Source: Dimorphilus gyrociliatus (taxonomy: Eukaryota > Animalia > Annelida). Taken from it: a stretch of 64,000 bases of DNA. The stretch covers positions 868,001 to 932,000 of the forward strand of contig CAJFCJ010000008.1 of the NCBI GenBank assembly GCA_904063045.1, read 5' to 3'. Within the stretch, counting starts at the first letter, position 1; each line of letters starts with the position of its first letter. Shown piece after piece: positions 13,301 through 53,475 of this stretch. A program made the position numbers and the translations under genes. The notes beneath the pieces are model-generated. The model saw nothing but the letters and a program-made list of their open reading frames with translations. It was not told the origin of the DNA and did not search any database.

Positions 13301-16300
13301 TACTGGTTGTTTTTAAGGCAAATGTTAATAGTTTAACATTCCTATATAGGCAGTCCAGGTGCTGTTGGTGCTGCTGGAGTTCAAGGTCCAAGAGGACCAC
13401 AAGGGCCTCCCGGTTCAATTGGGCAACCTGGCGATATTGGACCAGTAGGTCCAAATGGAAATAAAGGCCCAAAAGGTTCTCAGGGCCCTAGAGGAGATAA
13501 TGGGGTACAGGGACCAAATGGAATTAAGGGTATTGCTGGACCAAATGGTGATATAGGAGCACAAGGTGCTAGAGGAGGAATTGGTCCTATTGGCCCATTG
13601 GGAGACAAGGGAGTAGCAGGACCTCCAGGACAAGAAGGACCTAAAGGAGATGTTGGAAATGCTGGTCCAATGGGACCAGATGGACAAGTCGGTCCGAAAG
13701 GTGCCAAAGGTGGTGTTGGAGATCAAGGCCCTAAGGGAAAACAAGGTACTCAAGGCGGTGTTGGTCAACAAGGAAAGAAGGGAGAACTTGGAGCTGCTGG
13801 GCCTTTGGGACCTCAAGGAGACAAGGGGGTCGTTGGAATAAAGGGAATTGTGGGACAGAAAGGTTTAGTTGGTGATCAGGGTATTAGAGGAGTGCCAGGA
13901 GTCCTTGGTCCGAAAGGTTCCAAGGGTGCCAAAGGTGGTCAAGGTGCCCAGGGTCAACCTGGTAATCAAGGTGCTCAAGGAGCTCAAGGTGTTATTGGAA
14001 ACACAGGAGCATCTGGACCAGAAGGGTTAACTGGTTTAGATGGGCCGCCTGGCCCCCCTGGTGCTCAAGGTTTACCAGGACCACAAGGGTCAGTAGGACC
14101 AAGGGGTGATACTGGACCTGATGGTATCATTGGTAGACTTGGCCCACAGGGAAGTATCGGTGCCCCAGGTCTAAAAGGACCTAAAGGTGATCAAGGAAAC
14201 CCCGGACAGGCAGGTGTCCAAGGAGATTCAGGACCACAGGGTCTTAAAGGAGATGTGGGAGATCAAGGAATAGCTGGACCAGCTGGCGAAAAAGGAGCCA
14301 AAGGTTAGTCAGCTTAAATCCTACAAAATCAATAATCTGTTATTTTTTACAAGGCGTCAAGGGTGAAGTTGGAAGTCAAGGTGCTACTGGTATGCAGGGA
14401 CAAATTGGTATAGATGGACAGCAGGGTGCTCAAGGCGCTAAAGGATTAGCTGGAGGCGAGGGTCCCAAAGGTTATGTCGGTAGATCAGGACCAACAGGTC
14501 CTCAAGGAAATAAGGTAACATTGTAGATTCTTAAACAACGAAAAGATTATAATTTTCGGGTTTCAATATATAAATAGCTTCAATTATATAAATAGACTAC
14601 CATAGTATTTATAATTTCAATTTCATGCAGGGTACCAAAGGGCAGCCAGGATCTAATGGTATTTCTGGAGATGTAGGACCTCAGGGTCCACAAGGACCTA
14701 AAGGAGCAAAGGGTGTGGCTGGACCTGCTGGAGCCACTGGAGATCCAGGCTTGCCAGGCAATTCTGGTCCTCAGGGAGGTGTTGGCAACAAAGGTAATAT
14801 TGGAATCAAAGGAATCAAAGGTCAAAGGGGACGAGCAGGAGAGCGCGGTGATTCAGGTAAGTTGCGCTATAGACGATAGACTTTGACTGTAACCGACATC
14901 CCACATCATAGGCGACCAGGGAGCTACAGGTGATCAAGGTTTGTCTGGATTAGCTGGTGCACAAGGTCCAGTTGGACCAGCTGGGCCAGATGGTGATACT
15001 GGAGACGCTGGAGAGATCGGTAACAAAGGTAGCAGAGGATTACCTGGTCCAGAAGGTGTTGTCGGCCCTAAAGGCATTGCAGGTGACAATGGAGGTGCAG
15101 GACCGCAAGGACCACAAGGGGCAAGAGGAGATCCTGGAGAAGCGGGTCCGATTGGATCAACTGGAGCGCCTGGTGAACCAGGCGTACAAGGAAGAATTGG
15201 ACCAGTTGGACTACGGGGTGATTCCGGTAAATCTGGACAACCTGGACCGGCAGGATCTGCTGGTCCCAGAGGTATTATATAAATTTTTACTGAGAAAACA
15301 CTAATTTACACACCGATCATTTATAGGATTACCTGGAGTACAAGGACCTCAAGGAGGAAAAGGAATCAAGGGTATTAGAGGGCCGAAAGGACGCCAAGGA
15401 GAAGAAGGACCACGCGGAAACGATGGTCCGGAAGGTTCACGAGGTGCCCAAGGAGAAAGTGGGCCTCCAGGAGCCCGAGGTGGTCAAGGTCCTAGAGGTG
15501 ATACTGGTGATATTGGTCCTGCAGGAGAAAAAGGTGATGATGGCTTAGTGGGATTGGATGGCCCAATAGGTAGAGTTGGTGATCGTGGTCCTAGAGGTCC
15601 AGATGGACCTAGAGGCCCAGACGGTAGGCCCGGTAGTATCGGCTTACGAGGACAGATTGGAAATCCTGGTAAAAAAGGAGCAAAAGGACCCCAAGGCGAT
15701 CCTGGAGATCCAGGTCAGCCAGGCCCAGATGGACAGCAGGGTGGAACTGGATACACAGGCCGTTCTGGTGTTGGTGGATCTGTTGGTCAACAGGGAGTTA
15801 TTGGTGGAACTGGAAACGAAGGTCCCGTAGGCCCCCGAGGTTTACAGGGAGCTCCAGGACCCCAAGGTCCGCCTGGTGCAACCGGTCCTAGAGGTGATGC
15901 AGGTGTTGCTGGTTTACAAGGTTGGTTGAGAAATTATATCTCTCTGTATTATAAACGAAATTCAAAATTCTAGGTTCTCCTGGAAACCAAGGACCTCCAG
16001 GTCCCACGGGTCCTGTAGGCGAAATTGGAGACTTAGGTCTTCCTGGACCAAAAGGAGCCAGGGGAGATGCAGGTTTTCCAGGTTTACCTGGAGAACAGGG
16101 TCCAGCTGCATCTGGAGCTGGAAGACCAGGTCCCGTCGGCTCTCCTGGTCTACCAGGTCCTCTGGGAGTTGATGAGTGTTTGGTAAACAATGGAGGTTGT
16201 CAACACGTTTGTGTCAATACATATGATGGATACTGCTGTATGTGTAACGAAGGATTCCAACTTGTGCCGGTTGCCCAAGAAGTGACGAACTGTGTTATTC

Positions 16301-17065
16301 AAGATGTTACTTGCAGAGAAACCCAAACGGCAGCGAGACAATGTTTCTGTCAGCTAAGAGACGCAAACGGAAATCCAACGAGACAACTTCCAATTAATGG
16401 AACAACATGCACTGATATTGATGAATGTTCAAATTCAAATGGTCTATGCGAACACAATTGCCAAAATACAAGAGGATCATACCAGTGCACTTGCAATCAA
16501 GGTTTTGCGTTGCATCCAAACAAAAAAGACTGTCAAGGTAAGGAGTGTTTGATAATTAAAATATTTTCTAAATTGACAAACGCGTGTCTTGAAAACTTCA
16601 GATGTTGATGAATGTGCTACGCCAAATATTTGTGGATCAAACAAAGTCTGCTCAAACACATTAGGAGGCTACCTCTGTGGCGATAGCAGTTTGTACCAAA
16701 GTAAATTGAACAACAATTTTTCATGACTATGTTTTTCTTTCTGCACAGATATTCTAATCCGAAGAGTCGCTGCTGCTGCTGCTGCAGCAAGAGAAGATGA
16801 TCAAGAAGATGAAGATGCCAGCTCAACAGTTTCATCTACCTCTTCAACGACAACTGTCCTAGCAGCTGTTCTAAGCGGCTTGTTGGCAGTCATTTTCACT
16901 GTAATAATTGTCATAGCCTATGGAACTTGGAAGAAACGTAAGAGCCGTGGCACAGGTGATGTAGAGACTTCATCCAGTCATAGTGCTAAAACGCTCGCTT
17001 CGAGTCGCCTAAATCTGGGAATATTCGGAGGTGATTCAACCGAACGACCTGCTCATTTCGTATAA
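10333..17065 (+). CDS. Collagen A: type I transmembrane EGF-collagen, about 1913 aa
   Basis: ATG at 10333 followed directly by an intron; signal peptide [21 protein letters not shown]; CYKDGAIC cap; Gly-X-Y exons 10745-16164; EGF units 16165-16700; [25 protein letters not shown] then KKRK; stop 17065. All introns frame-consistent. Confidence 0.9.
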
Positions 17066-17762
17066 TAATAAATAGATGAAAAGAAATCAGAGGAAAAAGA
17101 AACAACCTTTTTTTCCTCCTTTATAAAGCAAGAATATCAATAAATCTACATTTTATCTAGAGGAAAAAAGCCTTTTCGGTTTTTTTTTAACTTCCGGATT
17201 TTAGGTTCCTTTTTATGTGCAATCGAACTTAGTTAATTAAAAAAAATGAAGCCTAAGAATTTGTGTTGCTTTCATGTTTTTTTTCCAGCCTGAAGAATGT
17301 GCTTATTTTTTTCTTTGAATGAAAGAGTTTCGTAATAAAATGTAAACAATAGTGTGTAAAACTACCTTGTTTATGTCTGGCGTTTATGTATAAGTGTATT
17401 AGCATAAATGATATACAACGTTTACTTAGTTGGAAAAATAAAATAGAACAAAAGTAATAAAAATTTTGATGATTCCATTTAAAAGAGAATTTATTACTTT
17501 TAATATAAACTGAATAATCTTATCTTTTCTTTATGTATATGAAAAAAAACATTAATTACCAGTTAATTAGCTAAAGTCGGGAAAGAGATATTTTGTCTAA
17601 GTTCCACTCAAATATGATAAAAAAGATGGAGGAGGATAAGATAAACGAAAAAAACATTGCACATTCTTTCTTTTTTAAAAACAAAAATGTCTCTTTATTT
17701 AAATGTTTATGTATGCGAATTAACCCGTCTTCTCGGGTTTTCCAACCTCCTAAGCTTTATTT

Positions 17763-20700
17763 CTATGTAAAAGTTGGCGGCCGTACTGTCGTATGACGTT
17801 TTGAGAAAGTTCCATCAGAACCCACTGATGAGATAACAGATTCTGCATCGCTTGATTCTGTTGAAGTTTTCTGCCATCTCTTTCGGACAAGAACCACAGC
17901 TAAAGTTAAAAGGGCACAGCCAGCAGCTGAGAGCAATGAAGCTAAGATAACTGTATTGGTAGACGACGATGATGAGGCAATTACTTGACCAGGATTACCT
18001 CCCTGTGCAGCAGCCCTTGCCTGATTAGATGATCTAAACTCAAGGTCACCTAAAAAATTAAATTTTATTAGTAAAAGTTAGTTTGAGTAGATAAGACATA
18101 CCTTCGCTATGACAGAAATATGCTCCATATGTATTGACACAAGTTGAGAATCCTTGTCTCAGACATATTTGAGTGTCTTCGCATTCATTCACATCCACAC
18201 AAGATCTACCATTCGCGCTCAATCTAAATCCTCTTCTAGTATCACAAGAGCACGTGAAACTACCAACAGTGTTGGTGCATTGGTCCTCACAAGGTTTTCC
18301 TTCATCGCATTCATTTATATCTAAAAATAAATAGTTATTCTATAAGAATAAGTCTTTTTGGAAACAATTTGAATTGATTACCTTCGCATTTATATCCAGT
18401 TACTTGGAGAATATTTGAGGTTCCTTCTTGAGTACATTGACAAGATCTTTGATTATTAATATAACTGCATCGAACTGTTCCAGCTTTACAAGAGGCAGCG
18501 CCTTGAGGAGTGGGGATAAGGCGATAACCAGGTCTACAAAGACAGCAGTATCCGTCGTAAGTATCATAACAGATATGTTCACATCCATGATTGTCGTTCA
18601 AGCATTCGTTAACTCCTGTTAATTTTAAATGTTCTATACATGAACCTATTATTGAGAAATATATAATTACCGAAGTATCCAGGTGATCCTCTTGGTCCCA
18701 TTGGACCTGGTGGTCCAATTTCTGAGCCTGGCGGACCTCGGGGGCCCTGTTGACCATTTGGCCCTCTTCTTCCTTTGTTCCCAGCCGGACCTTGAGGGCC
18801 TTGTGGGCCTTTTTGTCCAGGATCTCCTGGTGGACCTGGAGGTCCATCTATGCCTTTCTCGCCATTAAGTCCAGCTGGACCTGAGGGGCCAACTGGACCA
18901 GCATCTCCGGCTTCTCCTGGTGGACCGTCTGGTCCATCTTCTCCTCTTGATCCTGCTTGTCCTGTATAACCTTGCATTCCTGTAGCTCCTTGTTGTCCAA
19001 CGAGACCGCCAGTACCGTCTTGACCCTGAGAACCTCGTGGTCCAGTTGCTCCTTGCATGCCAAATGGCCCATTTGGACCTTTGTCTCCGACACCCCCAGA
19101 CAAACCATCAGGACCTGGAGCACCTTTACTTCCTTGTTGTCCTATATCTCCAGCCTGCCCAATCCTTCCAGGTAAGCCTTGTGAACCCATGGGACCAGTG
19201 GAACCTTGAGGACCTTGTAATCCCGTTCGGCCGCGGCGACCTTGTGGTCCTTTAGGACCTTGTAGGCCAGTTGCACCCTTGGCTCCCTTTGAACCAACTG
19301 GACCGGGTGATCCAGCAGGACCTGTCGCACCCGGAGAACCAGCTCCTCCTGGTAAGCCGTCAGGTCCAGCATCTCCAGGATCACCAAGTTCTCCTTGATC
19401 ACCTGCAATTCCTTGAGGTCCTTGTAAACCAACAGGACCTTGTGGTCCTCTGACACCTTGTGGCCCTTCATCACCCTGAGGTCCTGGGGGACCATCGGGT
19501 CCTTCTGCTCCTTTTTCGCCCACTGGACCAGTTGGTCCTATAAGAACATTTTTTGATATTTTATTGCTTGAGAAAACTAAAACTACAAGTGACTTTACCT
19601 TGCAGACCAGGCAATCCCTTGTCACCATCTAAACCAGGTAAACCTGTCGCTCCCTGTTCACCTTGAGGTCCTTGAGGACCAGGATTACCAGCTTGTCCAA
19701 CCAAACCTTTAGCGCCTTGAATACCAGTGGCACCTTGTGACCCTCTAGAACCAGTATTACCAGGGGGTCCTTTCATTCCCGGATAACCTTTCGGGCCTTT
19801 ATCTCCAACGGCCCCGATTGGCCCAACAACTCCGGGCTGACCAACAGAACCATCTGGTCCCTTTTCTCCAACGACTCCTTTTGCGCCCTTTATTCCCCTA
19901 GCACCATCTTGGCCTCTTGCTCCTTGAGCTCCTTGTGGGCCTTGAGCTCCTATTTGTCCTTCACCACCGAGAGGCCCTTTGTCACCAGCAGGGCCCTTAA
20001 GACCGGGATCTCCTTGAGGACCATCTTGTCCGACTTGACCTTCTGGTCCAGCCGTTCCGATCGGACCTGGAATAACGTAAAAATAAAGTAAGTTTATATG
20101 TTCAGAAACAACGCTTTTTAGTTTACCTTTCGGTCCGGTTGCTCCAAGTAAACCTGTTTGGCCAGCAGGACCAGGATCACCGATTGGCCCAATACCACCT
20201 ACAGCACCACGATTACCAACAGGTCCGGTTATACCAGTGTCACCAACAGGTCCCAAAACTCCTTGTTCACCAGTGTTACCTACGGGTCCTGGATCTCCAG
20301 TTGCTCCAATACCTCCTTGTATTCCTATATTTTCAATGTTCCATATAAATTTCTTAGTATCTTAATAAGACAAAACTCACCAATGTCGCCTGTATCTCCA
20401 GGTAAACCTACAGCTCCCTGGACTCCTTTAACTCCAGGTTGTCCTGCATCACCGATTGGGCCTTTAGGACCTCTCGGCCCATCTACTCCTTTCTGTCCTT
20501 TATCTCCCTGAGGTCCAGCATCTCCTGTATTTCCTTCTAATCCTGGAGGTCCTCTCTGGCCAACTTGGCCAGGAGCACCTTTTCCGCCAGTTGTACCAAC
20601 AGCTCCCACAGGTCCATCACCGCCAGCAACACCTGGTGCTCCTTTTGATCCTCTAGGACCAGGTGCTCCTTCTGCTCCATCTAAACCAGTCGATCCAGTC

Positions 20701-23700: not shown

Positions 23701-24754
23701 GCACCAGGGGGTCCGTCTTGGCCTTTTCCACCTAATAATTTGAGCATAGTCAAAAACCTATCTTATAATGAAAAAATTTCGCATTTACCAGGTGGGCCAT
23801 CTGCTCCCGCATTGCCACTTAATCCTGGTCTTCCTCTGTTTCCTTGGCGACCAGGTGGACCTGCTTGACCGTCTGGACCTTTGGCACCTTGTTCCCCTGC
23901 TGGTCCTTGTTGACCAGGTGCTCCAGGTTGGCCTATTATGCGTATAATAATTCGATTATCATTGAAGGATAAAAATAATAGACTTAATTTCTACCTGGGT
24001 TACCAAGAGGTCCTTCATTTCCCGCTATTCCTTGAGGGCCTCTATCTCCAGGAGGCCCGTTTAATCCTTTAGGACCTACAGGACCTTCAGGTCCTGATGT
24101 GCCTATCGGTCCGTCTCTACCTCTAGGACCGCCTGGTCCCTTAGGGCCTTTTGCTCCATTAGGTCCTGGGTCTCCAACTGGCCCCCTTCCTCCAGGTGGA
24201 CCCTGGATTCCAGGAGGCCCATCAGGTCCCCCTGTTCCTGGTGGACCAGGAGGTCCAGGGGGTCCTGGACGAGTATTTACTCCTATGAAAAGAAATTTGC
24301 GTAAGATAAAATAGTTTTAGGAAAAACGAAAGTTACCAGATCCTTCAAAGCAAACACCTCCTTCGTTATTACATCTGACATTAACGCCATTAGATTCTTG
24401 TCCGCTTCCTATAATTCAAATGAATTAATGTAATCAAAAAGTGTTTGTAAAATTAGCATATTCATAAAGGAAAACTAGCAAACCTGTTTGTAAAATATAT
24501 ATCACAACTATCCAGGACGCTGCGACTCTACCAAAACGGCGCGCCTAAAAAAGGAATAACAAAGGTTTATTTAATAAAAAGTTCGATGTAGTTAAGCCAG
24601 ACATATTATATATCTATTGCTATGTTTAACTACAAATACCAGGCATTAACCTTTGAATTAATCAAATATCATTGGTTTAAATAAACAAATTAATTGAACA
24701 ATTTGTTTTTGTCATATAACATTAACTATACAAGATAATAGCACTTACCATCAT
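17763..24754 (-). CDS. Collagen B: type I transmembrane EGF-collagen
   Basis: ATGATG at 24754-24749 then intron; signal peptide [26 protein letters not shown]; CNNEGGVC cap; Gly-X-Y 24282-18672; EGF units; [24 protein letters not shown] then RKR; ends PPTFT* at 17763. Confidence 0.9.
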
Positions 24755-25416
24755 TATTATGACGCCGAAATTTGGAGCTTGCAGGAACTGGCTCACGCAG
24801 ACTAGAAGTTGTGGGGCTAATGTTATGTTAGGGTGGATCAAGGCCCACCTTGTAATGATCGCAACCGGTTTTACGAATTGGGCAACTCCTAATATCAAAA
24901 ATTAACTATCGGTCGGGATATGATCCCTACTCCCTGCAACACTTTCGCGGCCGCGTTCAACTCGCCCCTCGTTATAGAAAATAAGGCCTAAAAACGATAG
25001 GGTGGGTGTAAGAAGGGTAAAAAGAAGAAGTAAGATTTAATGTAAACGATACGCCCGAATTGATTTATTGAGTTTAGCCAGCCTATTATGAACTTTTATA
25101 ATATTTCAACTTTGCTAATATAGAACTTGAATACATAGTAATATGTTATTAATTCTGAACTGAATTATTATTAGAAAACGCAAACATTAACGAGACGATT
25201 AAATATTTCGTCGTACTCGTAAAATTCTGATTATTGTATTAAAATTCTAAAACCAAACATCATAGGCCTACGTTTCCAGATGAGCATAAACTCAGGTGTA
25301 TACATTTTACATGTATATATATTATATATAAATGTATATAGTTTTACACCGAAAAAAAGCGTCCATTATTGCACCAAAAAAAAAAATTATATGGAAAAAA
25401 TATGGTATTCTTATAT

Positions 25417-28400
25417 TTAAATTTTTCTATCGAAAAGTCGCTCGTCGATGACACTTGAGTTCATTGTGCGATTATCGTAAGCATCGCTTTCTTCATCTCT
25501 GGATTTTCTTCTCTTCTTTATAATATGCCTTACTGCTACAACTAATATTGCGGCGGAAAGGATTCCCGATATTACAGCCAATATTGTAATGGTAACTGTT
25601 GATCCGTTGCTTTGGCTAATTGCTGTTTCAACTTGGTTGTTGTCAGCCTTTTGAGCAGCAGCTGATTGTCCCGTTGCTACCAAGGCAACTGAAAGAATTA
25701 TGAATTTTAGTACTAATTATAATAATTCGTTTGTCTTTTGTCTTACAGAGGCACATAAAAGATCCATAGGTGTTTACGCAAAATTGATCTCCTTGACAGG
25801 GGTTAGTACCAGAACATTCGTTATTATCTAAACAAGTTCTACCATCTGTAGACAGGGTAAAACCATCTCTGCAAGCACAAGTGTAACTTCCTCCAGTATT
25901 AACACAACGATCGTCACAGTTATGAGTTCCAGCATTACATTCATCAATATCTGCAAAAAGGAGCAAGTATATCGTATTAAAAGTTTAGCGAACTTCTCTA
26001 AGTGTCTTTAAATGCAAACCTCTACATCTGGTGCCACTGATAGGTACAACTCTATTATTCGAGTCAGTGCATGTACAAAGTCTTTGATTGTTGATATATT
26101 CACAAACAACGCTGTCAACTGTAAAATATTTATATATGAAAAGAAAGAACCAAGAATTAGCATCTTTAATCTTACTTGTACACGTCGTATCTTCAATTGG
26201 TATTGGTACTAAATTGAATCCTGGTCGACACAGGCAGCAAAAACCTTGGGCAGTATCGAAACAAACTTGATCACAACCACCATTATTTACAAGACACTCA
26301 TTCACTCCAAAAAATCCTGGTAAGCCTGTTTTACCAGTTGGACCGGGAGGACCACCAGGACTTCCAGCAATTCCACGAGGACCAGCAGGTCCTTCAGGAC
26401 CAATATCACCCTCTTCTCCCTGAGGTCCTATGGGTCCTATTTCTCCTTGTACTCCTCCATTTCCAGGTTGACCTGAAAGTTTACTAAATCGTTAAGACTT
26501 TCTCTCTCTATATATATTAATTTCTTACCCATCGGGCCCTCAGCTCCAGGACTACCATCCGCTCCTGGTGAACCTAAAGGTCCTCTTACTCCCATAACTC
26601 CAGGATTTCCAGGCGCCCCAATAGGCCCTCTTGGACCTTTTCTTCCTGTTCCTCCTGTTGCGCCAACTGGTCCAGGTGATCCAGTGCCACCTGAATTTAA
26701 ATAAAAGGGTGTATTTGATATAGAGATAAACTCTTATGTACTTACCTCTTTCGCCCTGTGGTCCATCAATACCCAATTCTCCAATACCTCCGGTTCTACC
26801 AACTGGTCCAGCTGGTCCAGTTGGTCCACGATCTCCCACATCCCCCTGTTGTCCTCTAGGGCCCCTAGCTCCTACAGGACCGGTTCCTCCCCTGGTTCCT
26901 TGAGATCCTTGCGGCCCTTGCCGACCTGGAGGTCCTAATTGACCTTGAGGACCATCAGCCCCTTGTTTACCAGGTTGGCCTGTATTTCCTCGGGGACCAT
27001 CTGGCCCATCCGGTCCTCTATATCCATCTGGTCCTTCGAAACCCATTATACCTCTTGGACCTGATGCTCCTCTGAAACCAGTTGCTCCTAAGCGACCTTG
27101 TTTTCCAGCCTGCCCTGGTGGACCCTTTTCACCTTTAAGACCTTGATCTCCAGCTTCTCCCCTTAAGCCGATAATACCCTGCCTACCCTCTCTACCAGTA
27201 TCACCTTTAGTTTATAAACATATTTATTTTATATTAAGAGAATTATAGTTTAACTAACCTATTGAACCCTGATTTCCAATGGGACCTTCAGGACCTGCTG
27301 GTCCTTCTGGTCCAGCAGGGCCTTGAGGACCAATTTCTCCTGTCGCGCCAATTCGACCTCTTCTGCCTTGTAGACCTCTTAATCCAGGCAGTCCTACCTC
27401 GCCAGTTGCGCCTAAAGGCCCTGGCGGACCGGCTTGTCCTCTATCGCCAGCTTCTCCTGCCACTCCTTGAACTCCCTCCTCTCCTGCGTCTCCATCGAGA
27501 CCTTTTGCCCCAACAGGTCCTGACTGGCCTCTGGGCCCTATGCCTCCTTTCGCACCAGGTTCTCCAGTACTTCCTCTGTCACCTGGCAATCCTCTTTCAC
27601 CTTGTGGCCCTGGGAGTCCTATTTCACCATTTGCTCCGATATCTCCAGTGTCACCCTGAATAGTTACACTTGAATAATATCTAATTTAGGGTAAGAAGCA
27701 GCTTACCATGGCTCCAGCATCTCCAGCCGGTCCTCTATCACCTGGACTTCCAGAAGCTCCAACTGGACCTATGGGACCCTTCGATCCTCTAGCACCAGGG
27801 TCTCCAGCATCTCCAATCATTCCCGTATCTCCTTGCGGACCTTGTCGACCATCTGGACCTGGAAGACCATCTGCTCCAATATCTCCTTGATCACCTATCG
27901 GCCCGTTGGGTCCTTTGGGACCAATATCACCGACTGGACCATCATTTCCTTTTGGACCTGTTAGTCCCATTATACCTTTTGGCCCAGTGCTGCCAGTATC
28001 TCCAAGTATACCTTGTGCTCCGTTTGGCCCCTTATTTCCCTCTAGACCTTGTTCACCTCTTGGGCCCTTTAGGCCTGGCCCACCAATAGGTCCTGGAGAA
28101 CCAGTATCTCCTTGGGAACCGGGTGAGCCCTTTTGGCCAGCACTTCCTTCTGCTCCTTCTGGTCCTTGATCGCCAACTAATCCTGGTAATCCTGTAGCAC
28201 CTTGGCCGCCTTGAGGGCCTTGCGGTCCAGTATTCCCGGGAGATCCAGCCTCACCCTTTCAGTAATTTTAAGTACAAATTATAACTCTTTCTAGTTAAAA
28301 CTTACTTGTGCACCAGGAGGCCCTTGTAAACCTTGTTGACCAATGGATCCCACTGGACCTGTTGCACCAACTGGTCCTGCTGGACCCTTTTGTCCAGTAT

Positions 28401-31400: not shown

Positions 31401-32274
31401 GAATACCATTAGGACCTTTTATTCCAGTTGGTCCTTTCGGTCCTATACTTCCAATGTCCCCAGGTTGACCAGCTGAGCCTGGTGGACCTACAAAAAATAT
31501 CAATTAAGAAAATTAATAAATTGTCATATTGCATATAATCATGAAATTCTGGTTCAAGTAGATTACCTTGCTGACCGTCAGCACCAGCTGGCCCTTTATC
31601 ACCAGGATCGCCAACCATTCCTTGTGGACCTCTTGGTCCTTGTAAACCAGGGGAACCATTTTGACCTACACCTCCTTTATTTCCAGTAGCTCCCTGAGAT
31701 CCACGAGGACCAGGATTTCCTTGTCGCCCAATATTTCCTACTGGACCTTGAGGTCCAACTGGGCCTTTGGGACCAGGTTTTCCAAAGTTACCAGAACGAC
31801 CAGGAGGTCCTGTTCCACCTGGATTCCCTTGGTCACCTGGGGGACCTTCTCGTCCCTCCGGACCTGCAGGTCCGGGTGGGCCCTGATTGCCTTTGGGGCC
31901 GATAACACCTCTTGGACCGATTCGGCCAGGAGATCCGGAAGAGCCGGTCGCACCTGGAAGACCTGCTGGCCCCGGTGGCCCAGGAACTCCTCTCAGACCT
32001 TGAAATAGAAATCAGTACTTATTGAAAATAATTTATTTTATTTAGGTGATTACCCGTTCCTTCCATACACAGACCGCCTTCCTTACATTCTGTATTTTGA
32101 TCACCTCCAACACCTCTGGCGGAATTCTGACAAAATGCTACAATAATAATAAAAGAAGAAAATTAAACGAGAGGTAACACAAAAGAAAGATTTGTTTGTA
32201 GAAGAAATTAGCATACCTTTGCTAACGAACAGCAAAAAAATAACAATCGGTAAAACGCTGAGCCTTTTTTCCAT
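25417..32274 (-). CDS. Collagen C: type I transmembrane EGF-collagen
   Basis: Signal peptide [23 protein letters not shown]; CKEGGLC cap; Gly-X-Y 31998-26309; EGF units; [22 protein letters not shown] then RHIIKKRRK; stop 25417. Confidence 0.9.
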
Positions 32275-33247
32275 CTGATATCAATAGAAATTATGAAATA
32301 ACACTGCAGTCGAATATGAAAAGTATTAGTTGTAAAATGAAATCGAAGTTATATTCTATAACATGTCTTCTCTTTAATACTTGGTTTTTTTTTAACATAC
32401 CAATATAACTTATAATAAATTGAATGAAAATAAAGGCTTTTCTATATTTTAATTGATAATTTTTGTTCTAATGCTTACCTTTAGTTTATTATAAGGCTAT
32501 GCAGCGTTAAAATTTCCTTCAATCCTGCCCTGGGAACGTTACTGCCCAGCTGCAGAGATGGAAAATTTTTTATAATTGTCCGCCTTAAAGCATATACAGC
32601 ACAAGCACAGTCCTTAGAGCGGCGCTGTCCTCCACAGTTGACTGCACTTTGAATCCTTATGATTAAAAAATGATCCGAAAGAGCTGTCTGATCTTTCATA
32701 CCGTCTCCAACGCTAACACTTTTACCGCCACGCGTTTTTAGAGCGGTTTATTTTGAAATACTTTTATTAAACTTTTTATGCTAACTCCCTGCACTTGCTT
32801 TCCCAATAAGAAATTACCATAGAAACATATGCAAATTAATTAATAAAAATTAATTCAATAGCTAAAATCTCGCTTAAAGATTTTAAAACTAAATAATATC
32901 TGTATTTATAAAGCATTTATTTTCAACTACTCCCCCTAGTGCGAAAATCAAATTCAACCAAGCTGAACACTCAAAGTGGATGTGGTAAAATCAACGTCCT
33001 ATATGCTTTTCTGTGACACCGAATAGTTTTCTCCAGAGATAGTGTGAGTGAGAGGGTTAGTAAAGTTTTCGTATGATCATTTCAACTTACTATCTTCAAT
33101 TACAAATTAAAGATAGTTTAAAGAAAATAATGCAGTGTTATAGCAATATTGCACAGTTGTAACAAAACAATTTGCAAAGTTACTCTAATGGCATTTTATT
33201 TATTTATTTAAAAACGATTATTTAATCATTACTATTCAAACAGGGCA
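32275..33247. promoter_or_regulatory. Bidirectional promoter / 5' leader region shared by collagens C and D
   Basis: Head-to-head ATGs 973 bp apart. Each start codon lies just downstream of an acceptor (C: TCAG/ATG; D: ACAG/GGCAATG) with upstream donors near 32478 (-) and 33045 (+), implying 5' UTR exons and a core of a few hundred bp. Confidence 0.6.
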
Positions 33248-36200
33248 ATGCTGAAGGTCCTTGCACTATTTTACATTTTCTCTGGAGTAAACTGGAGTAA
33301 GTATCTTATTTTTCCTTTAACGTTTTATCAATTCTTGTAGTAACGCATTTATATGCAAATATCTGCATATATGCTTTATCATCTTTTAAATATATTGATA
33401 ATTTTAAACCATCTTATTTATCGAATATCGTATTTATTGACCAAAATAAAAGAAATTTTGACAACTTTATTGATGTTCTCATAGTTTTACAAAAAAGAAC
33501 TTTTTCTTCTTTAGGTCTGGCTTTTTTTCTTGTGAAATTTTTTTTACAGCCTTTTTTTATATACAATTTTTAATATTCTTTTTTTAAACCAATAGTTTAC
33601 GCTCAGCAAAATGTTGGGGAAGGGCGAGGCGGTGACCAGACTGTAAAATGCAAAAAAGGAGGATTTTGTTATGATGGCACAGGTAGTCTATCAGACATTT
33701 ACCCTTTTAAACTCTTTCATCTATATTTTTCTTCACGATAATTTTCAGGCCAAAGAGGAGCTCCAGGTTTACCAGGGCCTGTGGGACCCCCAGGGGAGAC
33801 TGGTCCTGTAGGGGATAGAGGTATCGTAGGGCAAAAGGGTGTTCTTGGACCTAAAGGAGACAATGGCCCTCCAGGTAATTAATTACTCAAAAACAAACCC
33901 AATACACTGAAACATACGATTTTATTCTGTAGGTCCAGACGGAAACTATGGACCACAAGGTCCAGTAGGAGATACTGGTCCTCCTGGTTTTACGGGATCT
34001 GCAGGTCCACCAGGCCAGAGAGGTCCAATTGGATCTAAAGGCCCCCGTGGTATTCAAGGAGATAGGGGAAGAATAGGTCTAGCAGGTTTGGCTGGACCTG
34101 GTGGTCCCCAGGGGCCAGCTGGTAAAAAAGGTACCAAAGGAGTTGCTGGAGGACCTGGAGATTTCGGTCCACCAGGCTTACCTGGGGAAGACGGAGACAG
34201 GGGTGATAGAGGCCCTGTAGGAAATACAGGATTAGAAGGTATACATTTATTTTTCAGATATTAGATTTACGCTTTCTTAAAATTATGAAAAGGTCCAAGA
34301 GGGTTACCAGGCGATCGTGGGAGTAATGGTGATAAAGGTCCCCAAGGAGCTGAAGGCATTAAAGGAGCTCCTGGATCTCAAGGAGTGGCAGGAGAGTCTG
34401 GTCCTGTTGGGGAAAAGGGGACTAACGGTACAGATGGTCTACCAGGTGCAATTGGAAGAGATGGACCAGTAGGAGATAAAGGAGATCGCGGCCCACAGGT
34501 AAAAATACTTTGTTCATTTTTATAGTCAATAAAAAAAGGTATTTTAGGGGAAAATAGGAGAAAAAGGCCTCAAAGGATTACTGGGCTCTACAGGACCAAA
34601 GGGAGATAATGGCCCAAAAGGAATTATTGGTATGAAAGGAGAAAAGGGTTTCCGTGGTCCTTTAGGCGAACCAGGATCAGTCGGTAATCCAGGAATTGAT
34701 GGTCAACAAGGATTTAATGGGGGTCAGGGGTTACAAGGTTCAACAGGAGATACTGGGGGTATAGGACCCAAAGGAAACCCTGGTCCTGTTGGTAGTCAAG
34801 GATTACAAGGTGATTCTGGACCCGTTGGTCCAGCCGGGCCAAAGGGTTTACCTGGGAGCACAGGTGTACAAGGACCAGGAGGCAGTCCAGGACCACAAGG
34901 GGATAAAGGAGAAAAAGGTTTTCCTTAATCTGGCAAAGTTTCTGTTACTAATTGATTTTTGAACTCTAGGTTCTGTTGGTCTTCGTGGCATACCAGGAAA
35001 TATAGGAGTAATCGGTCTTAAAGGAAGTAATGGAAACCCTGGTATAAATGGACTGTCCGGCCCTGGAGGTGATCCAGGTGAAATAGGACCTCAGGGCAGT
35101 ACAGGACCTGAAGGAGATCCGGGAGTACCTGGTGTTAAAGGTTCAGCCGGAGGGCTTGGCGATACAGGTGATATTGGTCTAGATGGACCAATGGGAAAAA
35201 ATGGAACGATTGGTCCTGACGGAGATACTGGACCAAGAGGTACATTTTTGTCAACTATGATTCTTAATTTAACTATTTATATTAAATTCAGGTCCTGTCG
35301 GCGATGTTGGGGATCGAGGAAGTAAAGGGCCCGTAGGTAGTAAAGGACCACAGGGATTTGATGGATTAAAAGGAGATGCAGGAGAAAGGGGGTTTACAGG
35401 GCCGGACGGTCCTAAAGGACCAGTAGGCAAAGCTGGCGCTCAAGGTCTTCAAGGTAATAGAGGGAATGCTGGTGATGTTGGTGACACAGGCCCGCCAGGA
35501 GAAATCGGTTTAGTTGGAGGGCTAGGAGCAACTGGAGAAAAAGGACCTATTGGAGATCCCGGGGAGGCAGGAGTACCTGGTGGAAAGGGAATGAATGGAG
35601 AACCTGGACCAGACGGGCCGCAAGGCGATGCAGGTCAACTTGGTGAAAAGGGTGTTATAGGTCCAAAAGGAGATCAAGGATCCACAGGTCCTGCTGGAGC
35701 CATTGGAGTAGAAGGTGCTAAAGGCAACAAAGGGCCTCTTGGTCAGCAAGGAGTCATGGGAGATTTTGGACAACCTGGAGATAAAGGTGATATCGGTAGT
35801 AATGGTCTGCCTGGCAATAAGGGACAAGTTGGCGCCGCCGGACCAGCCGGGCCTATAGGAGATATTGGATCTCCTGGCGATGCAGGACCCGATGGATCAA
35901 TAGGATTAGATGGACGACAGGGTTCACCTGGAGACGCAGGAGGACCAGGTCCCCCCGGAATTCAAGGAGTTAAAGGCGTGAGAGGAGACTTTGGTTCTCG
36001 AGGAAATCCCGGTCCTGCAGGACCAAATGGTAATATAGGCCAAAATGGTCGTGTTGGCGATGTTGGTGATGTTGGAGTTGCTGGAGCTAAGGGAGCTCTA
36101 GGATCTGCTGGAGAAAAGGGAGCTGATGGGCCCATTGGTAACCCTGGAATCAATGGTGTTCAAGGACCTCGCGGTAAGCCAGGTCCAATTGGAGATCAAG

Positions 36201-39200
36201 GTGATACTGGGTTAGCAGGTGTAGATGGTGTAGTGGGGCCTTTGGGACCTCAAGGGCCTCAGGGAATTCCAGGGCTTGTAGGAGGTGTTGGTTTGGCAGG
36301 TCTACCAGGACTGCAAGGGCCAAGAGTAAGATCTGATAGTCCGTTTTAAGGAATCTTACTAATATTCCTCTTTTCAGGGTGATACTGGTGCTTCCGGAGC
36401 TCCTGGTCAATCAGGAGGCCAAGGCATACAAGGTGCCCAAGGTCAACCTGGGAGCGATGGACCCATGGGATCAACGGGTGTAAGAGGTCCTGTAGGGCCT
36501 GTTGGGTCTCAAGGTAGTAAAGGCTCAAATGGTGATTCTGGACCAAGAGGTATAAAAGGTATTCAAGGAAATGTTGGTTCTCCTGGAGATTCAGGTCCAA
36601 AAGGGCCGGCTGGTAATAAAGGGTTAAAGGGTCAACCAGGACAACAAGGATCTAGTGGAAGAAAAGGAGATATCGGAAATCCTGTATGATTCTTAATTTT
36701 TCTTGTCTTTTGTATTCATGTTTAACTGAGAAATTTTTTATTAGGGACCAAAAGGGCTTCAAGGTGAAAAGGGAGTTGGCAATCTAGTAGGAAAAACAGG
36801 TCCCCAGGGAAATCCGGGCGATATTGGAACTAAAGGACAGAAAGGTCAGAGAGGAGATAAAGGCTTACCAGGTAATGTGGGATCGAGAGGCGACACTGGT
36901 GGCCAAGGACCTGATGGACCTCTTGGCATTAAGGGTTTACGGGGTGATGAAGGTGGTGTTGGCGACAAGGGCCCTGTTGGAGAAAAAGGATCTCTTGGCC
37001 CATTAGGGCTTCCTGGAAAAAGGTAAAAAACTTTTTTTTGCATCAAAGTTTAATGTGTATTTATGTTTTTCAGAGGTCAACAAGGAGATGTAGGAGATCA
37101 AGGGGTTCTAGGGCCTGCAGGTAACAAAGGCAGCCCGGGGATTTCTGGAATCCCAGGAGTAAGAGGTTATACCGGACAACACGGGCCAGCTGGACCTAAT
37201 GGAAGAGCTGGACCTGCCGGTCCTGTTGGTTCTCAAGGTAATACTGGCGCACCAGGTAATGTGGGAGATAAAGGGCCACCAGGAAATACTGGAGCACCTG
37301 GACCACAAGGTCCTAAAGGCATTTCAGGTCCTATAGGCCCTTTAGGTGACCAAGGAGCTGTTGGGTCGAAGGGAAGTATAGGAAGTAAAGGTCAATCAGG
37401 TATACAAGGAGTAAATGGTGAAGCTGGGTATACTGGTTCTACTGGTCAAAAAGGTTCACGAGGTAATAAAATTCTGTTGGCATTAGCGAAAATATTTATA
37501 AATTTTTCTTATTTAGGTGATCAAGGGCCTGTTGGGGAAAGGGGTCCTAATGGCAATATTGGTCCACAAGGTTTTACTGGTAATACTGGGTCAAAAGGTA
37601 TTCAAGGATTAGTTGGTCAAAAAGGAAGCCAAGGACTTGTTGGAGAACCTGGCTCAAAAGGTCCTCAAGGTCCTCAGGGTAATCAAGGAGATGTCGGACC
37701 AATTGGAAATCCTGGGCAACAGGGCCGACCAGGAGGACCTGGTTTGCGAGGAAATACTGGTGATAGAGGAGATATTGGAATAACTGGAGCGAAAGGACCA
37801 ATTGGTAACAGAGGTCTGCCAGGCAGTCAAGTAAGCTTTATAGTCAAGAGATCATTTTCTTTCATTTTAATTATTTTGTATTTCTTTTAATCGACTTTAG
37901 GGAGATCCAGGAGAACAAGGAGACTCTGGTGGAATTGGAGATCCTGGTGACCCTGGTCCTAATGGAGAGGCAGGAAAACAGGGTCCTCAGGGCAGCCAAG
38001 GAGCAACAGGAAATACTGGTGTTCAGGGCAGAACAGGATTCACTGGTGCACAAGGATCCAGAGGCTCTCCTGGTGCTACGGGGGGAAGAGGTCCTGACGG
38101 AGATATTGGAGAAGACGGCATTGTTGGACCTCAAGGACCAGCTGGTGATAGAGGCAGAGACGGCTCAAAAGGCTCTGTTGGTCTTAAAGGAGAAATTGGT
38201 GTCATTGGTGGCCGAGGCCCTGCTGGTTCTAGAGGTCCACTGGGGAACACAGGAAATCCAGGCCCTGTTGGGCTCAAAGGAGATCAAGGACCTATCGGAC
38301 CGGAGGGTCCCCCTGGTGATACAGGGCCTATTGGAAGAGAGGGGTTAGTAGGAAGATCAGGAGTACCTGGTGTTCAAGGTGACATCGGGGGTACAGGTTT
38401 TCAAGGAGAAAAAGGAAGAGTGGGACCTCGAGGTTTTATAGGCCCACTTGGTGCTACAGGAGAAAGAGGCATCAAAGGAATAATTGGTTTACAAGGATTA
38501 AAGGGTCAAATTGGTGCTCGAGGTCAAAGAGGACCTGCTGGAATAAAGGGCAATGATGGTCAAAACGGTGGGTTAGGAAATCCTGGCCGAGAGGGGCAGG
38601 TTGGTCCGCCTGGTTTAATAGGACCACAAGGTAAAAAATGATAAATAAATATTATCTTAAATATTCTTACGAATATTTTGAAGGCTTTACTGGACCGAAA
38701 GGACGCGCTGGTCCGAGAGGTGTGAGAGGAAATAGAGGTTCTGTCGGCGACAAAGGAGATGCTGGAAATCCAGGGCAAGCAGGGCCGATAGGAAATCCGG
38801 GAAGTCCTGGAGTTCTAGGAGTTCGCGGGCCACCTGGACCACAAGGATTTACAGGTTCTAATGGTCCTGTTGGGGCGACTGGTGGAACAGGTGGAACAGG
38901 GAACACAGGTCTTACTGGCCTTCCTGGATTACATGGTCCCAGAGGATCTATTGGACCAAAAGGCGATGCTGGTCGCCCTGGAGATACTGGCTCCGTTGGG
39001 CCTCTTGGTAATAATCTTTATCTTATTGATATCACTCCAGTCGATAGAATTTAATTTAGATATTTCATCACTCAGGTTCTAGAGGGTCACCGGGTTCTAA
39101 CGGAGCTCGAGGACCAACAGGACAGAGGGGAGAACCTGGAGACGATGGAGAAGAGGGTCCAATGGGTAAGCAAGGTCCAGCTGGAGACCCAGGAGGTCAG

Positions 39201-40177
39201 CCGGGTCCTGTCGGCCCTCCGGGTCCACCTGGATTTTTTGGGGCAAATGAGTGCCTAGTTAACAACGGCGGTTGCGATCATGTATGTATGGATACTTCAG
39301 ATGGATACTGCTGTCTTTGTCGTCCGGGTTATAACTTAATCCCAGTTCCTATTACGGATACAACTTGTTCGAGTTCGTACAAACAAATAAGTAAATAACT
39401 ATTTTATCAATAAAAATAATACTTAACAACAGTTGATTCTGTATCCTGCTCCTACATCGGATCGCAAAGAGTATGTACATGTACAGATACATCAAATCAA
39501 ATAGTTGTCATTAGTGGGACGCGTTGTAGAGGTAATATATTTTTTGTAAAATATTTCTATGTTAAAGTTAATCTTTAATATCATCAGACGTGGACGAATG
39601 TCGCCTCGGAAGCCATAACTGTGATCAATACTGCTTTAATACTGTTGGGTCTTTTACTTGTGGTTGTAGGCAAGGTTTCGAATTGAGCACTGATCTAAGA
39701 ACTTGTGACGGTAAAGAGATAAACCTTTGCTTCTTATATATAGAGACATGCAATTAAATCTCTCAATCTCCGTTTACAGATGTAAATGAATGCGAAAAAT
39801 CGGCCTCAGCCTGTGATCAAGGGAGAACTTGCGTTAATACTTATGGTTCTTATTTCTGTTTTGGTTTGTATTCTGTCTTGGCCATTTTTATTAGTATTAA
39901 GTATTTTATTCACTAATTTTTACTTATATCATAATCGTATTTAGGTGGTGGGATTGCTCAAGGACCACCAGTTGCTGCAAGTCAGAAAGGAAAAAATCCG
40001 AATCAAAATGGAATGCCTGTTGAGAATGGAAGTGGAAACACAATTACAATTGTCTGTCTTTCTGTCGTAACTGCGTTACTTCTATGTGGGGTGATTGCGA
40101 TTGGAGTTCGAAAATTCATCCTAAGACGTCGTAATTTGGGAGATGTCGAAACGGATAGCAGCTCGTCTGCTTTTTAA
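33248..40177 (+). CDS. Collagen D: type I transmembrane EGF-collagen
   Basis: Signal peptide [20 protein letters not shown]; CKKGGFC cap; Gly-X-Y 33749-39239; EGF units 39240-39864; [24 protein letters not shown] then RKFILRRR; ends [11 protein letters not shown] at 40177. Confidence 0.9.

Positions 40178-53438: not shown

Positions 53439-53475
<37 letters not shown>

What the first reader, a model, noticed from the sequence alone, without database searches (positions are those of the whole stretch)
16165..39535. Unusual 11-cysteine EGF module directly after the helix: candidate trimerisation domain
All four begin EC-L-x-NxGC-x3-C-x-[DN]T-x2-G[YF]-CC-x-C-x2-G[FY]-x-L. They then insert about 35-45 aa with four Cys (e.g. 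D: [41 protein letters not shown]) before the canonical G-x-x-C-x-D[IV][DN]EC ending. That makes 11 Cys: six EGF, four in the insert, and one extra in the CC doublet. An odd conserved Cys next to a collagen C-terminus is what an interchain-disulfide, chain-selection domain would look like, replacing COLFI/NC1 (inference). Locations: A 16165-16416, B about 18617-18380, C about 26308-26010, D about 39240-39535.
Basis: partly seen in the sequence, partly recalled or inferred. Interest (0 to 1): 0.8.

Follow-up and report, generated by a model that had tools for sequence, protein, structure and literature searches.

The report
Odd-cysteine EGF stalk of membrane collagens
Four neighbouring, expressed collagen genes of a small marine animal each end in a membrane anchor preceded by an LDL-receptor-like EGF pair. 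The pair is split by a small four-cysteine unit found in no other protein family, and it carries one unpaired cysteine that only this lineage has, so that cysteine is more likely an added cross-link than the device that assembles the three chains.

Summary
All four genes carry the 11-cysteine stretch three residues after the Gly-X-Y helix. The start of B is off by one base, and C and D each have an intron inside the stretch.

**What it is.**
- The stretch is two modules, not one EGF with an insert: an EGF like LDL-receptor EGF-A (six cysteines plus one extra at the Glu316 position), then a 4-Cys unit with no Pfam or PDB sequence match.
- A calcium-binding EGF, a half EGF, a membrane helix and a short tail follow. 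These are C-terminally anchored (type I) collagens with about 1,600 helix residues.
- RNA contigs confirm the splicing of A and B.

**What the relatives show.**
- A profile of the 4-Cys unit found eight true relatives among 1.84 billion proteins, all with this architecture.
- Only the window's genes and their orthologues in a second species carry the CC doublet. Six distant relatives have Tyr there, so 10 cysteines.
- In relatives the linker between the two modules runs from 6 to about 650 residues. It often starts with a furin-type GRKKR site.

**Verdict.** Each chain has 23 cysteines outside the membrane helix (2 N-terminal, 21 C-terminal), so one is unpaired. An intermolecular disulfide is likely. 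A trimerisation or chain-selection role is untested, and this cysteine cannot be what the wider family relies on.

The parts
16165..16293 (+). Gene A EGF1 (LDLR EGF-A-like, 7 Cys). The extra Cys codon is 16234-16236.
   Evidence: Pfam FXa_inhibition E 3.9e-16. Best PDB sequence match is the LDLR EGF-AB pair. The exon is confirmed by RNA contigs.
16294..16410 (+). Gene A 4-Cys unit (C-x9-C-x-C-x19-C, with an N-G-T sequon)
   Evidence: No Pfam match and no PDB sequence match. AF2 predicts a three-stranded sheet. The A5 profile finds only this family.
16411..16537 (+). Gene A calcium-binding EGF2 (LDLR EGF-B-like)
   Evidence: EGF_CA and cEGF. Aligns with LDLR EGF-B.
16602..16688 (+). Gene A truncated EGF3 (4 Cys; C5 and C6 missing)
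   Evidence: Sequence read. Flanking introns 16538-16601 and 16689-16748 are seen in RNA contigs.
16856..16930 (+). Gene A membrane helix, followed by a basic stop-transfer and a 44-residue tail (stop at 17063-17065)
   Evidence: Sequence read and coordinates
18386..18616 (-). Gene B EGF1 plus 4-Cys unit with no intron between them. The extra Cys codon is 18545-18547.
   Evidence: A phase-1 intron, 18615-18669 as laid (GT..AG cut one base further, 18617-18670), separates the module from the helix.
18102..18320 (-). Gene B cbEGF2 plus truncated EGF3 exon
   Evidence: EGF_CA E 5.2e-12. Exon bounds come from RNA contigs.
17886..17951 (-). Gene B membrane helix
   Evidence: The same is seen in orthologue cDNA L014.
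26176..26308 (-). Gene C EGF1. The extra Cys codon is 26237-26239.
26020..26118 (-). Gene C 4-Cys unit as a separate 99-base phase 1-1 exon
   Evidence: Splice sites read. No Pfam match.
25745..25950 (-). Gene C cbEGF2 plus truncated EGF3
   Evidence: EGF_CA E 1.7e-14. Coordinates.
25531..25596 (-). Gene C membrane helix
39240..39372 (+). Gene D EGF1. The extra Cys codon is 39309-39311.
39433..39531 (+). Gene D 4-Cys unit as a separate 99-base phase 1-1 exon
   Evidence: Splice sites read. No Pfam match.
39588..39864 (+). Gene D cbEGF2 exon, an intron, and the truncated EGF3 exon
40043..40108 (+). Gene D membrane helix
10606..10650 (+). Gene A N-terminal C-x6-C motif just before the helix. The signal peptide starts at 10492.
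24335..24379 (-). Gene B N-terminal C-x6-C motif
   Evidence: The same motif follows a signal peptide in L014.
32052..32093 (-). Gene C N-terminal C-x6-C motif
33643..33684 (+). Gene D N-terminal C-x6-C motif

Best explanation
The 11-Cys stretch is the top of a membrane-proximal stalk in four paralogous type I (N-out, C-terminally anchored) collagens. After about 1,600 helix residues and a three-residue linker, each chain has five parts:

1. An EGF like LDL-receptor EGF-A, probably calcium-binding.
2. A 4-Cys three-stranded unit specific to this family. It is most simply a degenerate EGF that lost its first two cysteines and pairs internally.
3. A calcium-binding EGF like LDL-receptor EGF-B.
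4. A half EGF.
5. A membrane helix and a short tail.

**Shown:** the domain order, the expression of A and B, the selection on the module, and the fact that one cysteine per chain cannot be paired within the chain.

**Inferred:**
- The unpaired one is the extra Cys of the doublet. It sits at the variable position before C4 (Glu316 in the LDL receptor), in the second strand of the main hairpin, so its side chain should face away from the core.
- It forms a disulfide with another chain, either inside the trimer (one bond, one thiol left) or between trimers.
- Chain association starts at this membrane-tethered C-terminal end, because three chains are held in two dimensions by their anchors and stalks.
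- The extra Cys is a staple added in this lineage, not the selection device.
For: **Architecture:**

**Splicing and expression:**. Full-length orthologue cDNA L014 has a signal peptide, C-x6-C, a 1,584-residue uninterrupted Gly-X-Y run, 11+6+4 Cys and a membrane helix.

**LDL-receptor likeness:**
- By sequence, E 4.6e-15, with the extra Cys aligned to the Glu before C317.
- By structure, the AF2 model (pLDDT 82.5) matches 1hj7 at Z 6.9, rmsd 2.4 over all 80 target residues, 50% identity.

**The 4-Cys unit is a separate module:** it is its own exon in C and D, and the linker in relatives is variable or very large.

**The unit is specific to this family:** the profile search found 9 hits in 1.84e9 proteins, 8 real, all with this architecture.

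**The extra Cys is lineage-specific but conserved there:**
- Present in A to D, L002, L014, P0126 and the three orthologues on L018.
- Tyr in L001, L003, L008, L009, P0127 and L017.

**Purifying selection:**

**No Cys in the helices:**

**Known membrane collagens nucleate next to the membrane:** review PMC7848082.
Against: - The disulfide map was not determined. The structure tool returns no coordinates, so which Cys is unpaired is an inference.
- The AF2 model places EGF1 against cbEGF2 as in the LDL receptor, with the 4-Cys unit looping out. It may also reflect the model's memory of the LDL receptor.
- The 4-Cys unit folded without EGF1 gave only pLDDT 68.8.
- No oligomer prediction or experiment was possible.
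- EGF domains are not known trimerisation domains.
- The N-terminal C-x6-C motif is an alternative site for covalent chain linking.
- The taxonomic range of the relatives is unknown, because their sources carry no names.
Confidence: 0.5

Rival explanations
1. One reading: the 11-Cys module is itself the trimerisation and chain-selection domain, standing in for COLFI or NC1, and the odd Cys makes the interchain disulfide that fixes chain composition.
For: - Neither end of the protein has room for a coiled coil or any known collagen trimerisation domain.
- The module starts three residues after the helix.
- The odd Cys is conserved in four old paralogues and in a second species.
- Four clustered paralogues would allow heterotrimers.
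Against: - Six family members lack this Cys yet keep the same helix-to-EGF junction.
- One Cys per chain gives at most one bond per trimer.
- The doublet's second Cys is the ordinary C4 of the EGF, so this is not a collagen III-type CC knot.
- Nothing here tested oligomerisation.
Confidence: 0.2
2. The extra Cys links the collagen to a different partner, not to a sister chain, or it stays a free thiol. Possible partners are another matrix protein with an odd cysteine count, or a neighbouring trimer in a surface lattice.
For: - The position is predicted to be exposed, from the alignment to LDLR Glu316 and its place in the second strand of the hairpin.
- Three thiols per trimer cannot all pair inside the trimer.
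- An earlier, unchecked scan note describes secreted mini-collagens with three-Cys tails in this genome.
Against: No partner was identified or tested.
Confidence: 0.2
3. The extra Cys is paired inside its own chain through a rearranged topology, for example with the first Cys of the 4-Cys unit only six residues beyond EGF1. A different cysteine is then the unpaired one.
For: - In these genes the linker between EGF1 and the 4-Cys unit has shrunk to six residues. In relatives without the extra Cys it is 7 to several hundred residues.
- The AF2 model packs the parts closely.
Against: - The count stays odd, so some Cys is still unpaired.
- In the 10-Cys relatives the 4-Cys unit must pair within itself.
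- Side chains of adjacent Cys in a strand point to opposite faces.
Confidence: 0.1

Closest known systems
LDL receptor EGF-A / EGF-B pair (PDB 1hj7, 3bps, 3p5b); also LRP2 and ApoER2 EGF pairs
   Same: EGF1 and cbEGF2 are about 50% identical to the pair over aligned positions and share the G-x-N-E-C start, the N-N-G-G-C loop and the D-I-D-E-C junction. The AF2 model superposes on 1hj7 at Z 6.9, rmsd 2.4 over 80 residues.
   Different: Here the pair follows a collagen helix, not LDL-A repeats, and no YWTD propeller follows it. It is split by a roughly 40-residue 4-Cys unit. EGF1 has a Cys where the receptor has Glu316.
MACIT membrane collagens (XIII, XXIII, XXV; COL-99) and collagen XVII
   Same: These are collagen helices tethered to the cell surface by a single membrane helix. 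Chain association occurs next to the membrane, and a furin-type site lies between anchor and helix. Relatives of the window genes have GRKKR right after EGF1.
   Different: MACITs are type II, with an N-terminal anchor, coiled-coil nucleation, N-to-C folding and interrupted helices. The window genes are type I, with a signal peptide, a C-terminal anchor, EGF domains where the coiled coil would be, and an almost uninterrupted helix of about 1,600 residues. The window genes themselves lack the furin site.
CCBE1 (collagen and calcium-binding EGF domains 1)
   Same: It combines FXa-type and calcium-binding EGF with collagen repeats. It is the nearest named cluster by language-model features, at a score of 0.80, which is a lead only.
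   Different: From general knowledge: in CCBE1 the EGF domains lie N-terminal to two short collagen repeats and the protein is secreted. It has no 4-Cys unit and no long helix.
Collagen III C-terminal cystine knot (G-P-C-C-G)
   Same: A CC doublet lies near the C-terminal end of a triple helix.
   Different: From general knowledge: in collagen III both Cys lie at the helix end and make interchain bonds. Here the doublet is 20 residues into an EGF strand and its second Cys is the ordinary C4, so only one Cys per chain is spare.
C. elegans cuticle collagens processed by the convertase BLI-4
   Same: These collagens are first held at the membrane and released at a dibasic site (abstract of PMC10538796). 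This is a functional parallel for the GRKKR-bearing relatives.
   Different: Their anchor and cleavage site are N-terminal, their helices are short, and they have no EGF domains.

Membership tests
EGF / calcium-binding EGF (Pfam FXa_inhibition, EGF_CA, cEGF) | Six-Cys pattern with profile match above the curated cut-off | tested here: met
   EGF1 of A, B and D scores 59.3, 34.4 and 40.7 bits against a cut-off of 33.4. C scores 32.8, just under. cbEGF2 of A, B and C is above the EGF_CA cut-off; D's cbEGF2 was read but not scanned.
EGF / calcium-binding EGF | The 4-Cys unit matches an EGF profile | tested here: not met
   The C and D 4-Cys exons have no Pfam hit at E up to 1. The A unit has no PDB sequence hit at E up to 10. 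Only the Cys spacing and the C-x-D-x-D-E-C junction resemble the last two thirds of an EGF.
LDL receptor family | EGF-A/EGF-B-type pair | tested here: met
LDL receptor family | LDL-A repeats before the EGF pair and a YWTD propeller after it | tested here: not met
   Collagen precedes the pair. A half EGF and a membrane helix follow it.
MACIT / type II membrane collagens | N-terminal cytoplasmic tail and signal-anchor, with the ectodomain C-terminal | tested here: not met
   There is an N-terminal signal peptide and a C-terminal membrane helix followed by basic residues.
MACIT / type II membrane collagens | Juxtamembrane coiled coil for trimerisation | tested here: not met
   Between helix and membrane lie only Cys-rich EGF units and a short Ser/Thr/Ala stalk. 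The N-terminal non-collagenous part is about 22 residues. No coiled-coil predictor was run.
Fibrillar collagens | COLFI C-propeptide and a helix of about 1,014 residues | tested here: not met
   No COLFI hit in the C-terminal pieces scanned, from EGF1 to the half EGF; the membrane-helix and tail exons were read, not scanned. The helices have about 1,600 residues.
Collagen III-type cystine knot | Two spare adjacent Cys per chain at the helix end | tested here: not met
   Only one Cys of the doublet is spare. The other aligns with EGF C4.
The family defined here (helix, EGF1, 4-Cys unit, cbEGF, half EGF, membrane helix) | Same domain order in unrelated samples | tested here: met
   L001, L003, L007/L008, L009, L014, L017 and P0127
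Interchain-disulfide trimerisation domain | Forms trimers, with the extra Cys in an interchain bond | not testable with these tools
   Only monomer prediction is available, and it returns no coordinates. No multimer tool was on hand.

The most novel reading that the evidence does not exclude
The stalk (4-Cys unit, cbEGF, half EGF, membrane helix) may be a membrane-tethered equivalent of a procollagen C-propeptide. It would gather three chains in the plane of the membrane and nucleate a C-to-N triple helix.

In most family members it would then be cut off at the conserved GRKKR site just after EGF1, releasing a roughly 0.5-micrometre collagen capped by EGF1. The lineage in this window would have lost the cut, shortened the linker to six residues and gained a surface Cys on EGF1. 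That would turn a secreted collagen into a permanently anchored, disulfide-linked cell-surface collagen.

This would be a third, undescribed way of assembling collagen, beside C-propeptide or NC1 domains and juxtamembrane coiled coils.
Probability: 0.25. Interest if true: 0.8.

Novelty: new variant of a known kind. Interest (0 to 1): 0.52.

Why it matters
The review read here describes the MACIT membrane collagens as type II proteins that nucleate through coiled coils. From general knowledge, the other described membrane collagens are type II as well.

These genes show a long, almost uninterrupted helix anchored by its C-terminal end through EGF domains, with no known trimerisation domain anywhere in the protein. 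That makes two questions directly testable with a small recombinant stalk:
- How is such a collagen registered and nucleated?
- Does a single surface cysteine staple chains or trimers together?

The 4-Cys unit gives a specific marker (alignment A5) for finding the family in other animals. The GRKKR site in relatives suggests a release step that mirrors the one in MACITs and nematode cuticle collagens.

Tried and rejected
It gives stops; the frame is shifted by one base.
- **Word search with the L008 stalk.** The 580 hits were swamped by fibrillins, LTBPs and SCUBEs, and none listed carries a collagen domain. It is useless for finding the family.
- **Word search with the L009 4-Cys region.** No hit.
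- **First try of the search for related loci with partial rows.** Loci L010-L013 from that scan are ordinary multi-EGF proteins, not family members.
- **PDB 'Pizza' propeller hits for B's 4-Cys region.** These are sums of six-bit repeat matches that do not align the cysteines. Rejected as chance.
- **P0128 in the profile search.** A tandem-repeat artefact.
- **AF2 of the 4-Cys unit plus cbEGF2 without EGF1.** Too low in confidence to search with.
- **Cysteines that seemed to lie in the helices.** They are intron read-through just after GT donors.
- **Pairing of the odd Cys with the N-terminus.** Rejected: the N-terminal motif has two Cys of its own and lies about 460 nm away along the helix.
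- **Literature searches for a described collagen-EGF-membrane family or annelid cuticle collagen genes.** None found.
Full report
**1. The observation**

The correct span is window:18386-18616:-.

All four stretches carry 11 cysteines before the D-[IV]-[DN]-E-C of the next EGF, and all 11 columns align.

In C and D the stretch is interrupted by a short phase-1 intron: C 26175-26119 and D 39373-39432.

The window is AT-rich animal DNA with four collagen genes: A on the + strand, B and C on the - strand, D on the + strand.

Contigs of an RNA run and of a second run of unrecorded type skip exactly the predicted introns at the 3' ends of A and B. The genes and their splicing are therefore real.

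**2. What each gene encodes**

The N-terminus has a signal peptide and a non-collagenous stretch of about 22 residues with a conserved C-x6-C motif directly before the helix.

The helix has about 1,610-1,635 Gly-X-Y residues in 12-16 exons, separated by introns of about 40-150 bases. It contains no cysteine. The three apparent ones are intron read-through.

The C-terminal end is the same in all four genes:
- the helix stops three residues before the first EGF cysteine;
- EGF1 follows, with 7 Cys;
- then a 4-Cys unit;
- then a canonical calcium-binding EGF, with 6 Cys;
- then an EGF cut off after its fourth Cys;
- then a short Ser/Thr/Ala stalk;
- then a membrane helix followed by basic residues;
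- then a tail of 20-45 residues.

This is a type I, C-terminally anchored collagen. A 6.1-kb cDNA of the B orthologue from another sample (L014) shows the whole protein in one frame. It has a signal peptide, C-x6-C, an uninterrupted Gly-X-Y run of 1,584 residues, 11+6+4 cysteines and a membrane helix.

Each chain therefore has 2 + 21 = 23 cysteines outside the membrane helix. One cannot be paired within the chain.

**3. Two modules, not one EGF with an insert**

EGF1 matches Pfam FXa_inhibition. Its best sequence match among solved structures is the LDL-receptor EGF-A/EGF-B pair, at E 4.6e-15. EGF1 aligns to EGF-A and the following cbEGF aligns to EGF-B.

In that alignment the first Cys of the doublet lies on the Glu before C317 of the receptor, which is Glu316 by the numbering. 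It is the free 'x' of the C-x-[DN]-x4-[FY]-x-C-x-C motif.

Several results argue that the four-Cys stretch is a separate module:
- It has no Pfam match and no PDB sequence match.
- In C and D it is its own 99-base exon, phase 1 at both ends. That is the usual signature of a shuffled module.
- EGF1 keeps a sixth Cys at normal spacing (12-15 residues after C5) in every family member.
- The unit's last Cys stands in the usual C-x-D-x-D-E-C junction to the next cbEGF.

I read the unit as a degenerate EGF that lost C1 and C2. This is an inference.

The AF2 model of the A module has pLDDT 82.5 and pTM 0.60. It gives the unit three strands and puts the doublet in the second strand of the EGF1 hairpin. 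The model superposes on the LDL-receptor pair 1hj7 at Z 6.9, rmsd 2.4 over all 80 residues. In the model, then, the unit loops out between an A/B-like pair.

With 50% identity to a well-known structure and only 11 alignment rows, the model is not independent evidence. Folding the unit with cbEGF2 alone gave low confidence, pLDDT 68.8. The tool returns no coordinates, so disulfide pairs cannot be read.

**4. Relatives**

A word search with the A exon found three kinds of hit:
- a fragment 86% identical to A;
- two distant fragments from marine metatranscriptomes;
- an ordinary multi-EGF sponge protein that is not family.

The contigs of the two distant fragments (L001, L003) encode collagen, EGF1, the 4-Cys unit, cbEGF, a half EGF and a membrane helix.

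A pattern scan of metagenome contigs added three more loci:
- L007 and L008 have at least 1,000 helix residues.
- L009 has about 650 residues with VWA-like domains between EGF1 and the 4-Cys unit.

A profile of the 4-Cys unit alone (A5), run against 1.84 billion representative proteins, gave nine hits at E up to 0.001. Eight are real and all belong to this family. The unit is thus a marker of the family, within the reach of a 32-position profile.

None of the hits carries a taxon or gene name, so the taxonomic range is unknown.

L017 is a protein of more than 3,200 residues of the same kind. It has N-terminal VWA domains and a VWA domain inserted in the linker.

In L003, L009, P0127 and L017 the linker begins with a furin-type G-R-K-K-R a few residues after the sixth Cys of EGF1. 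The window genes have a six-residue linker and no such site.

**5. The extra cysteine**

The doublet is present in:
- A to D;
- the A orthologue L002;
- the B orthologues P0126, P0129 and L014;
- the C, B and A orthologues on L018, a genomic contig of a second species that keeps the gene order and orientation.

All six distant members have Tyr at that position and 10 cysteines, or another even count.

Between the two close species the synonymous sites are saturated, while the module is 88-90% identical, with dN/dS of 0.01-0.03. The Cys is therefore under selection where it exists. It is an addition of this lineage and not a requirement of the family.

**6. How it probably works**

The proteins have no coiled coil, COLFI, NC1 or C1q domain. 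Known membrane collagens associate next to the membrane and fold away from it.

By elimination, the most likely place for chain association is the C-terminal end, where anchors and stalks hold chains together in two dimensions. The helix would then fold from C to N. This is inference.

The calcium site of an EGF-A-type domain lies at its N-terminal end. Three such sites would therefore sit right at the helix terminus. This too is inference.

The spare Cys should be exposed. It most likely bonds to a sister chain, which leaves one thiol per trimer, or to a neighbouring trimer or another partner.

Relatives do without it, and one Cys per chain cannot close a three-chain knot.

**7. Limits**

- Organism names were coded. 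Earlier unchecked scan notes suggest the annelid Dimorphilus gyrociliatus, and the short introns fit, but I did not test this.
- No multimer prediction, disulfide map or experiment was possible.
- Seven literature searches found no description of this architecture. The library does not hold most subscription journals.

Noticed in passing
window 10606-10650 (+), 24335-24379 (-), 32052-32093 (-), 33643-33684 (+): All four genes have a conserved C-x6-C motif ending in G-[TS]-G (P-G in gene A) directly before the first Gly-X-Y triplet. Two Cys per chain at the N-terminal helix end is what an interchain knot would need.
   Followed up: partly
L014:3-5750: The full-length cDNA of the B orthologue has a single uninterrupted Gly-X-Y run of 1,584 residues (528 triplets). 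That is about half again as long as a fibrillar collagen helix. The only break is one extra residue near the C-terminal end.
   Followed up: partly
L003, L009, L017 and P0127, a few residues after the sixth Cys of EGF1: There is a conserved furin-type G-R-K-K-R site, and often a second R-x-K-R further on, at the start of the linker between EGF1 and the 4-Cys unit. It is absent from the window genes and from L001 and L008.
   Followed up: partly
L009:1-3669 and L017:1-9615: Some relatives carry VWA domains inserted between EGF1 and the 4-Cys unit. L017 also has several VWA domains before the helix.
   Followed up: partly
Cytoplasmic tails of L001, L008, L009, L017 and P0127: A conserved tail motif of the form G-[ST]-x-[RS]-S-F-[NH]-[ST]-[LV]-x-S-[KR]-[FY] is present in the distant relatives. 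It is missing from the four window genes.
   Followed up: no
window 16393-16401 (gene A) and the same column in the relatives: An N-G-T glycosylation sequon just before the last Cys of the 4-Cys unit is kept in A and in the seven distant relatives read. B (T-G-Y) and C and D (S-G-T) have lost it.
   Followed up: no
window 18687-18676, 26320-26309, 39228-39239: In B, C and D the helix ends with an aromatic pair (G-Y-F-G, G-F-F-G) right before the EGF. Gene A has G-P-L-G.
   Followed up: no
window about 48600-57000 (-): Exons of a ryanodine or IP3 receptor-like channel gene: RIH domain at E 1.3e-5, and an Ion_trans match below the Pfam cut-off.
   Followed up: partly
window 61065-61463 (-): An exon encoding MORN repeats (E 1.1e-18).
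   Followed up: partly
window 40936-42177 (+): A 413-residue open frame just after gene D has only a sub-threshold match to the Rrn7/TAF1B cyclin domain.
   Followed up: partly
L018:1-20738: A second species keeps the C, B and A orthologues in the same order and relative orientation as the window, so the cluster predates the split of the two species.
   Followed up: partly
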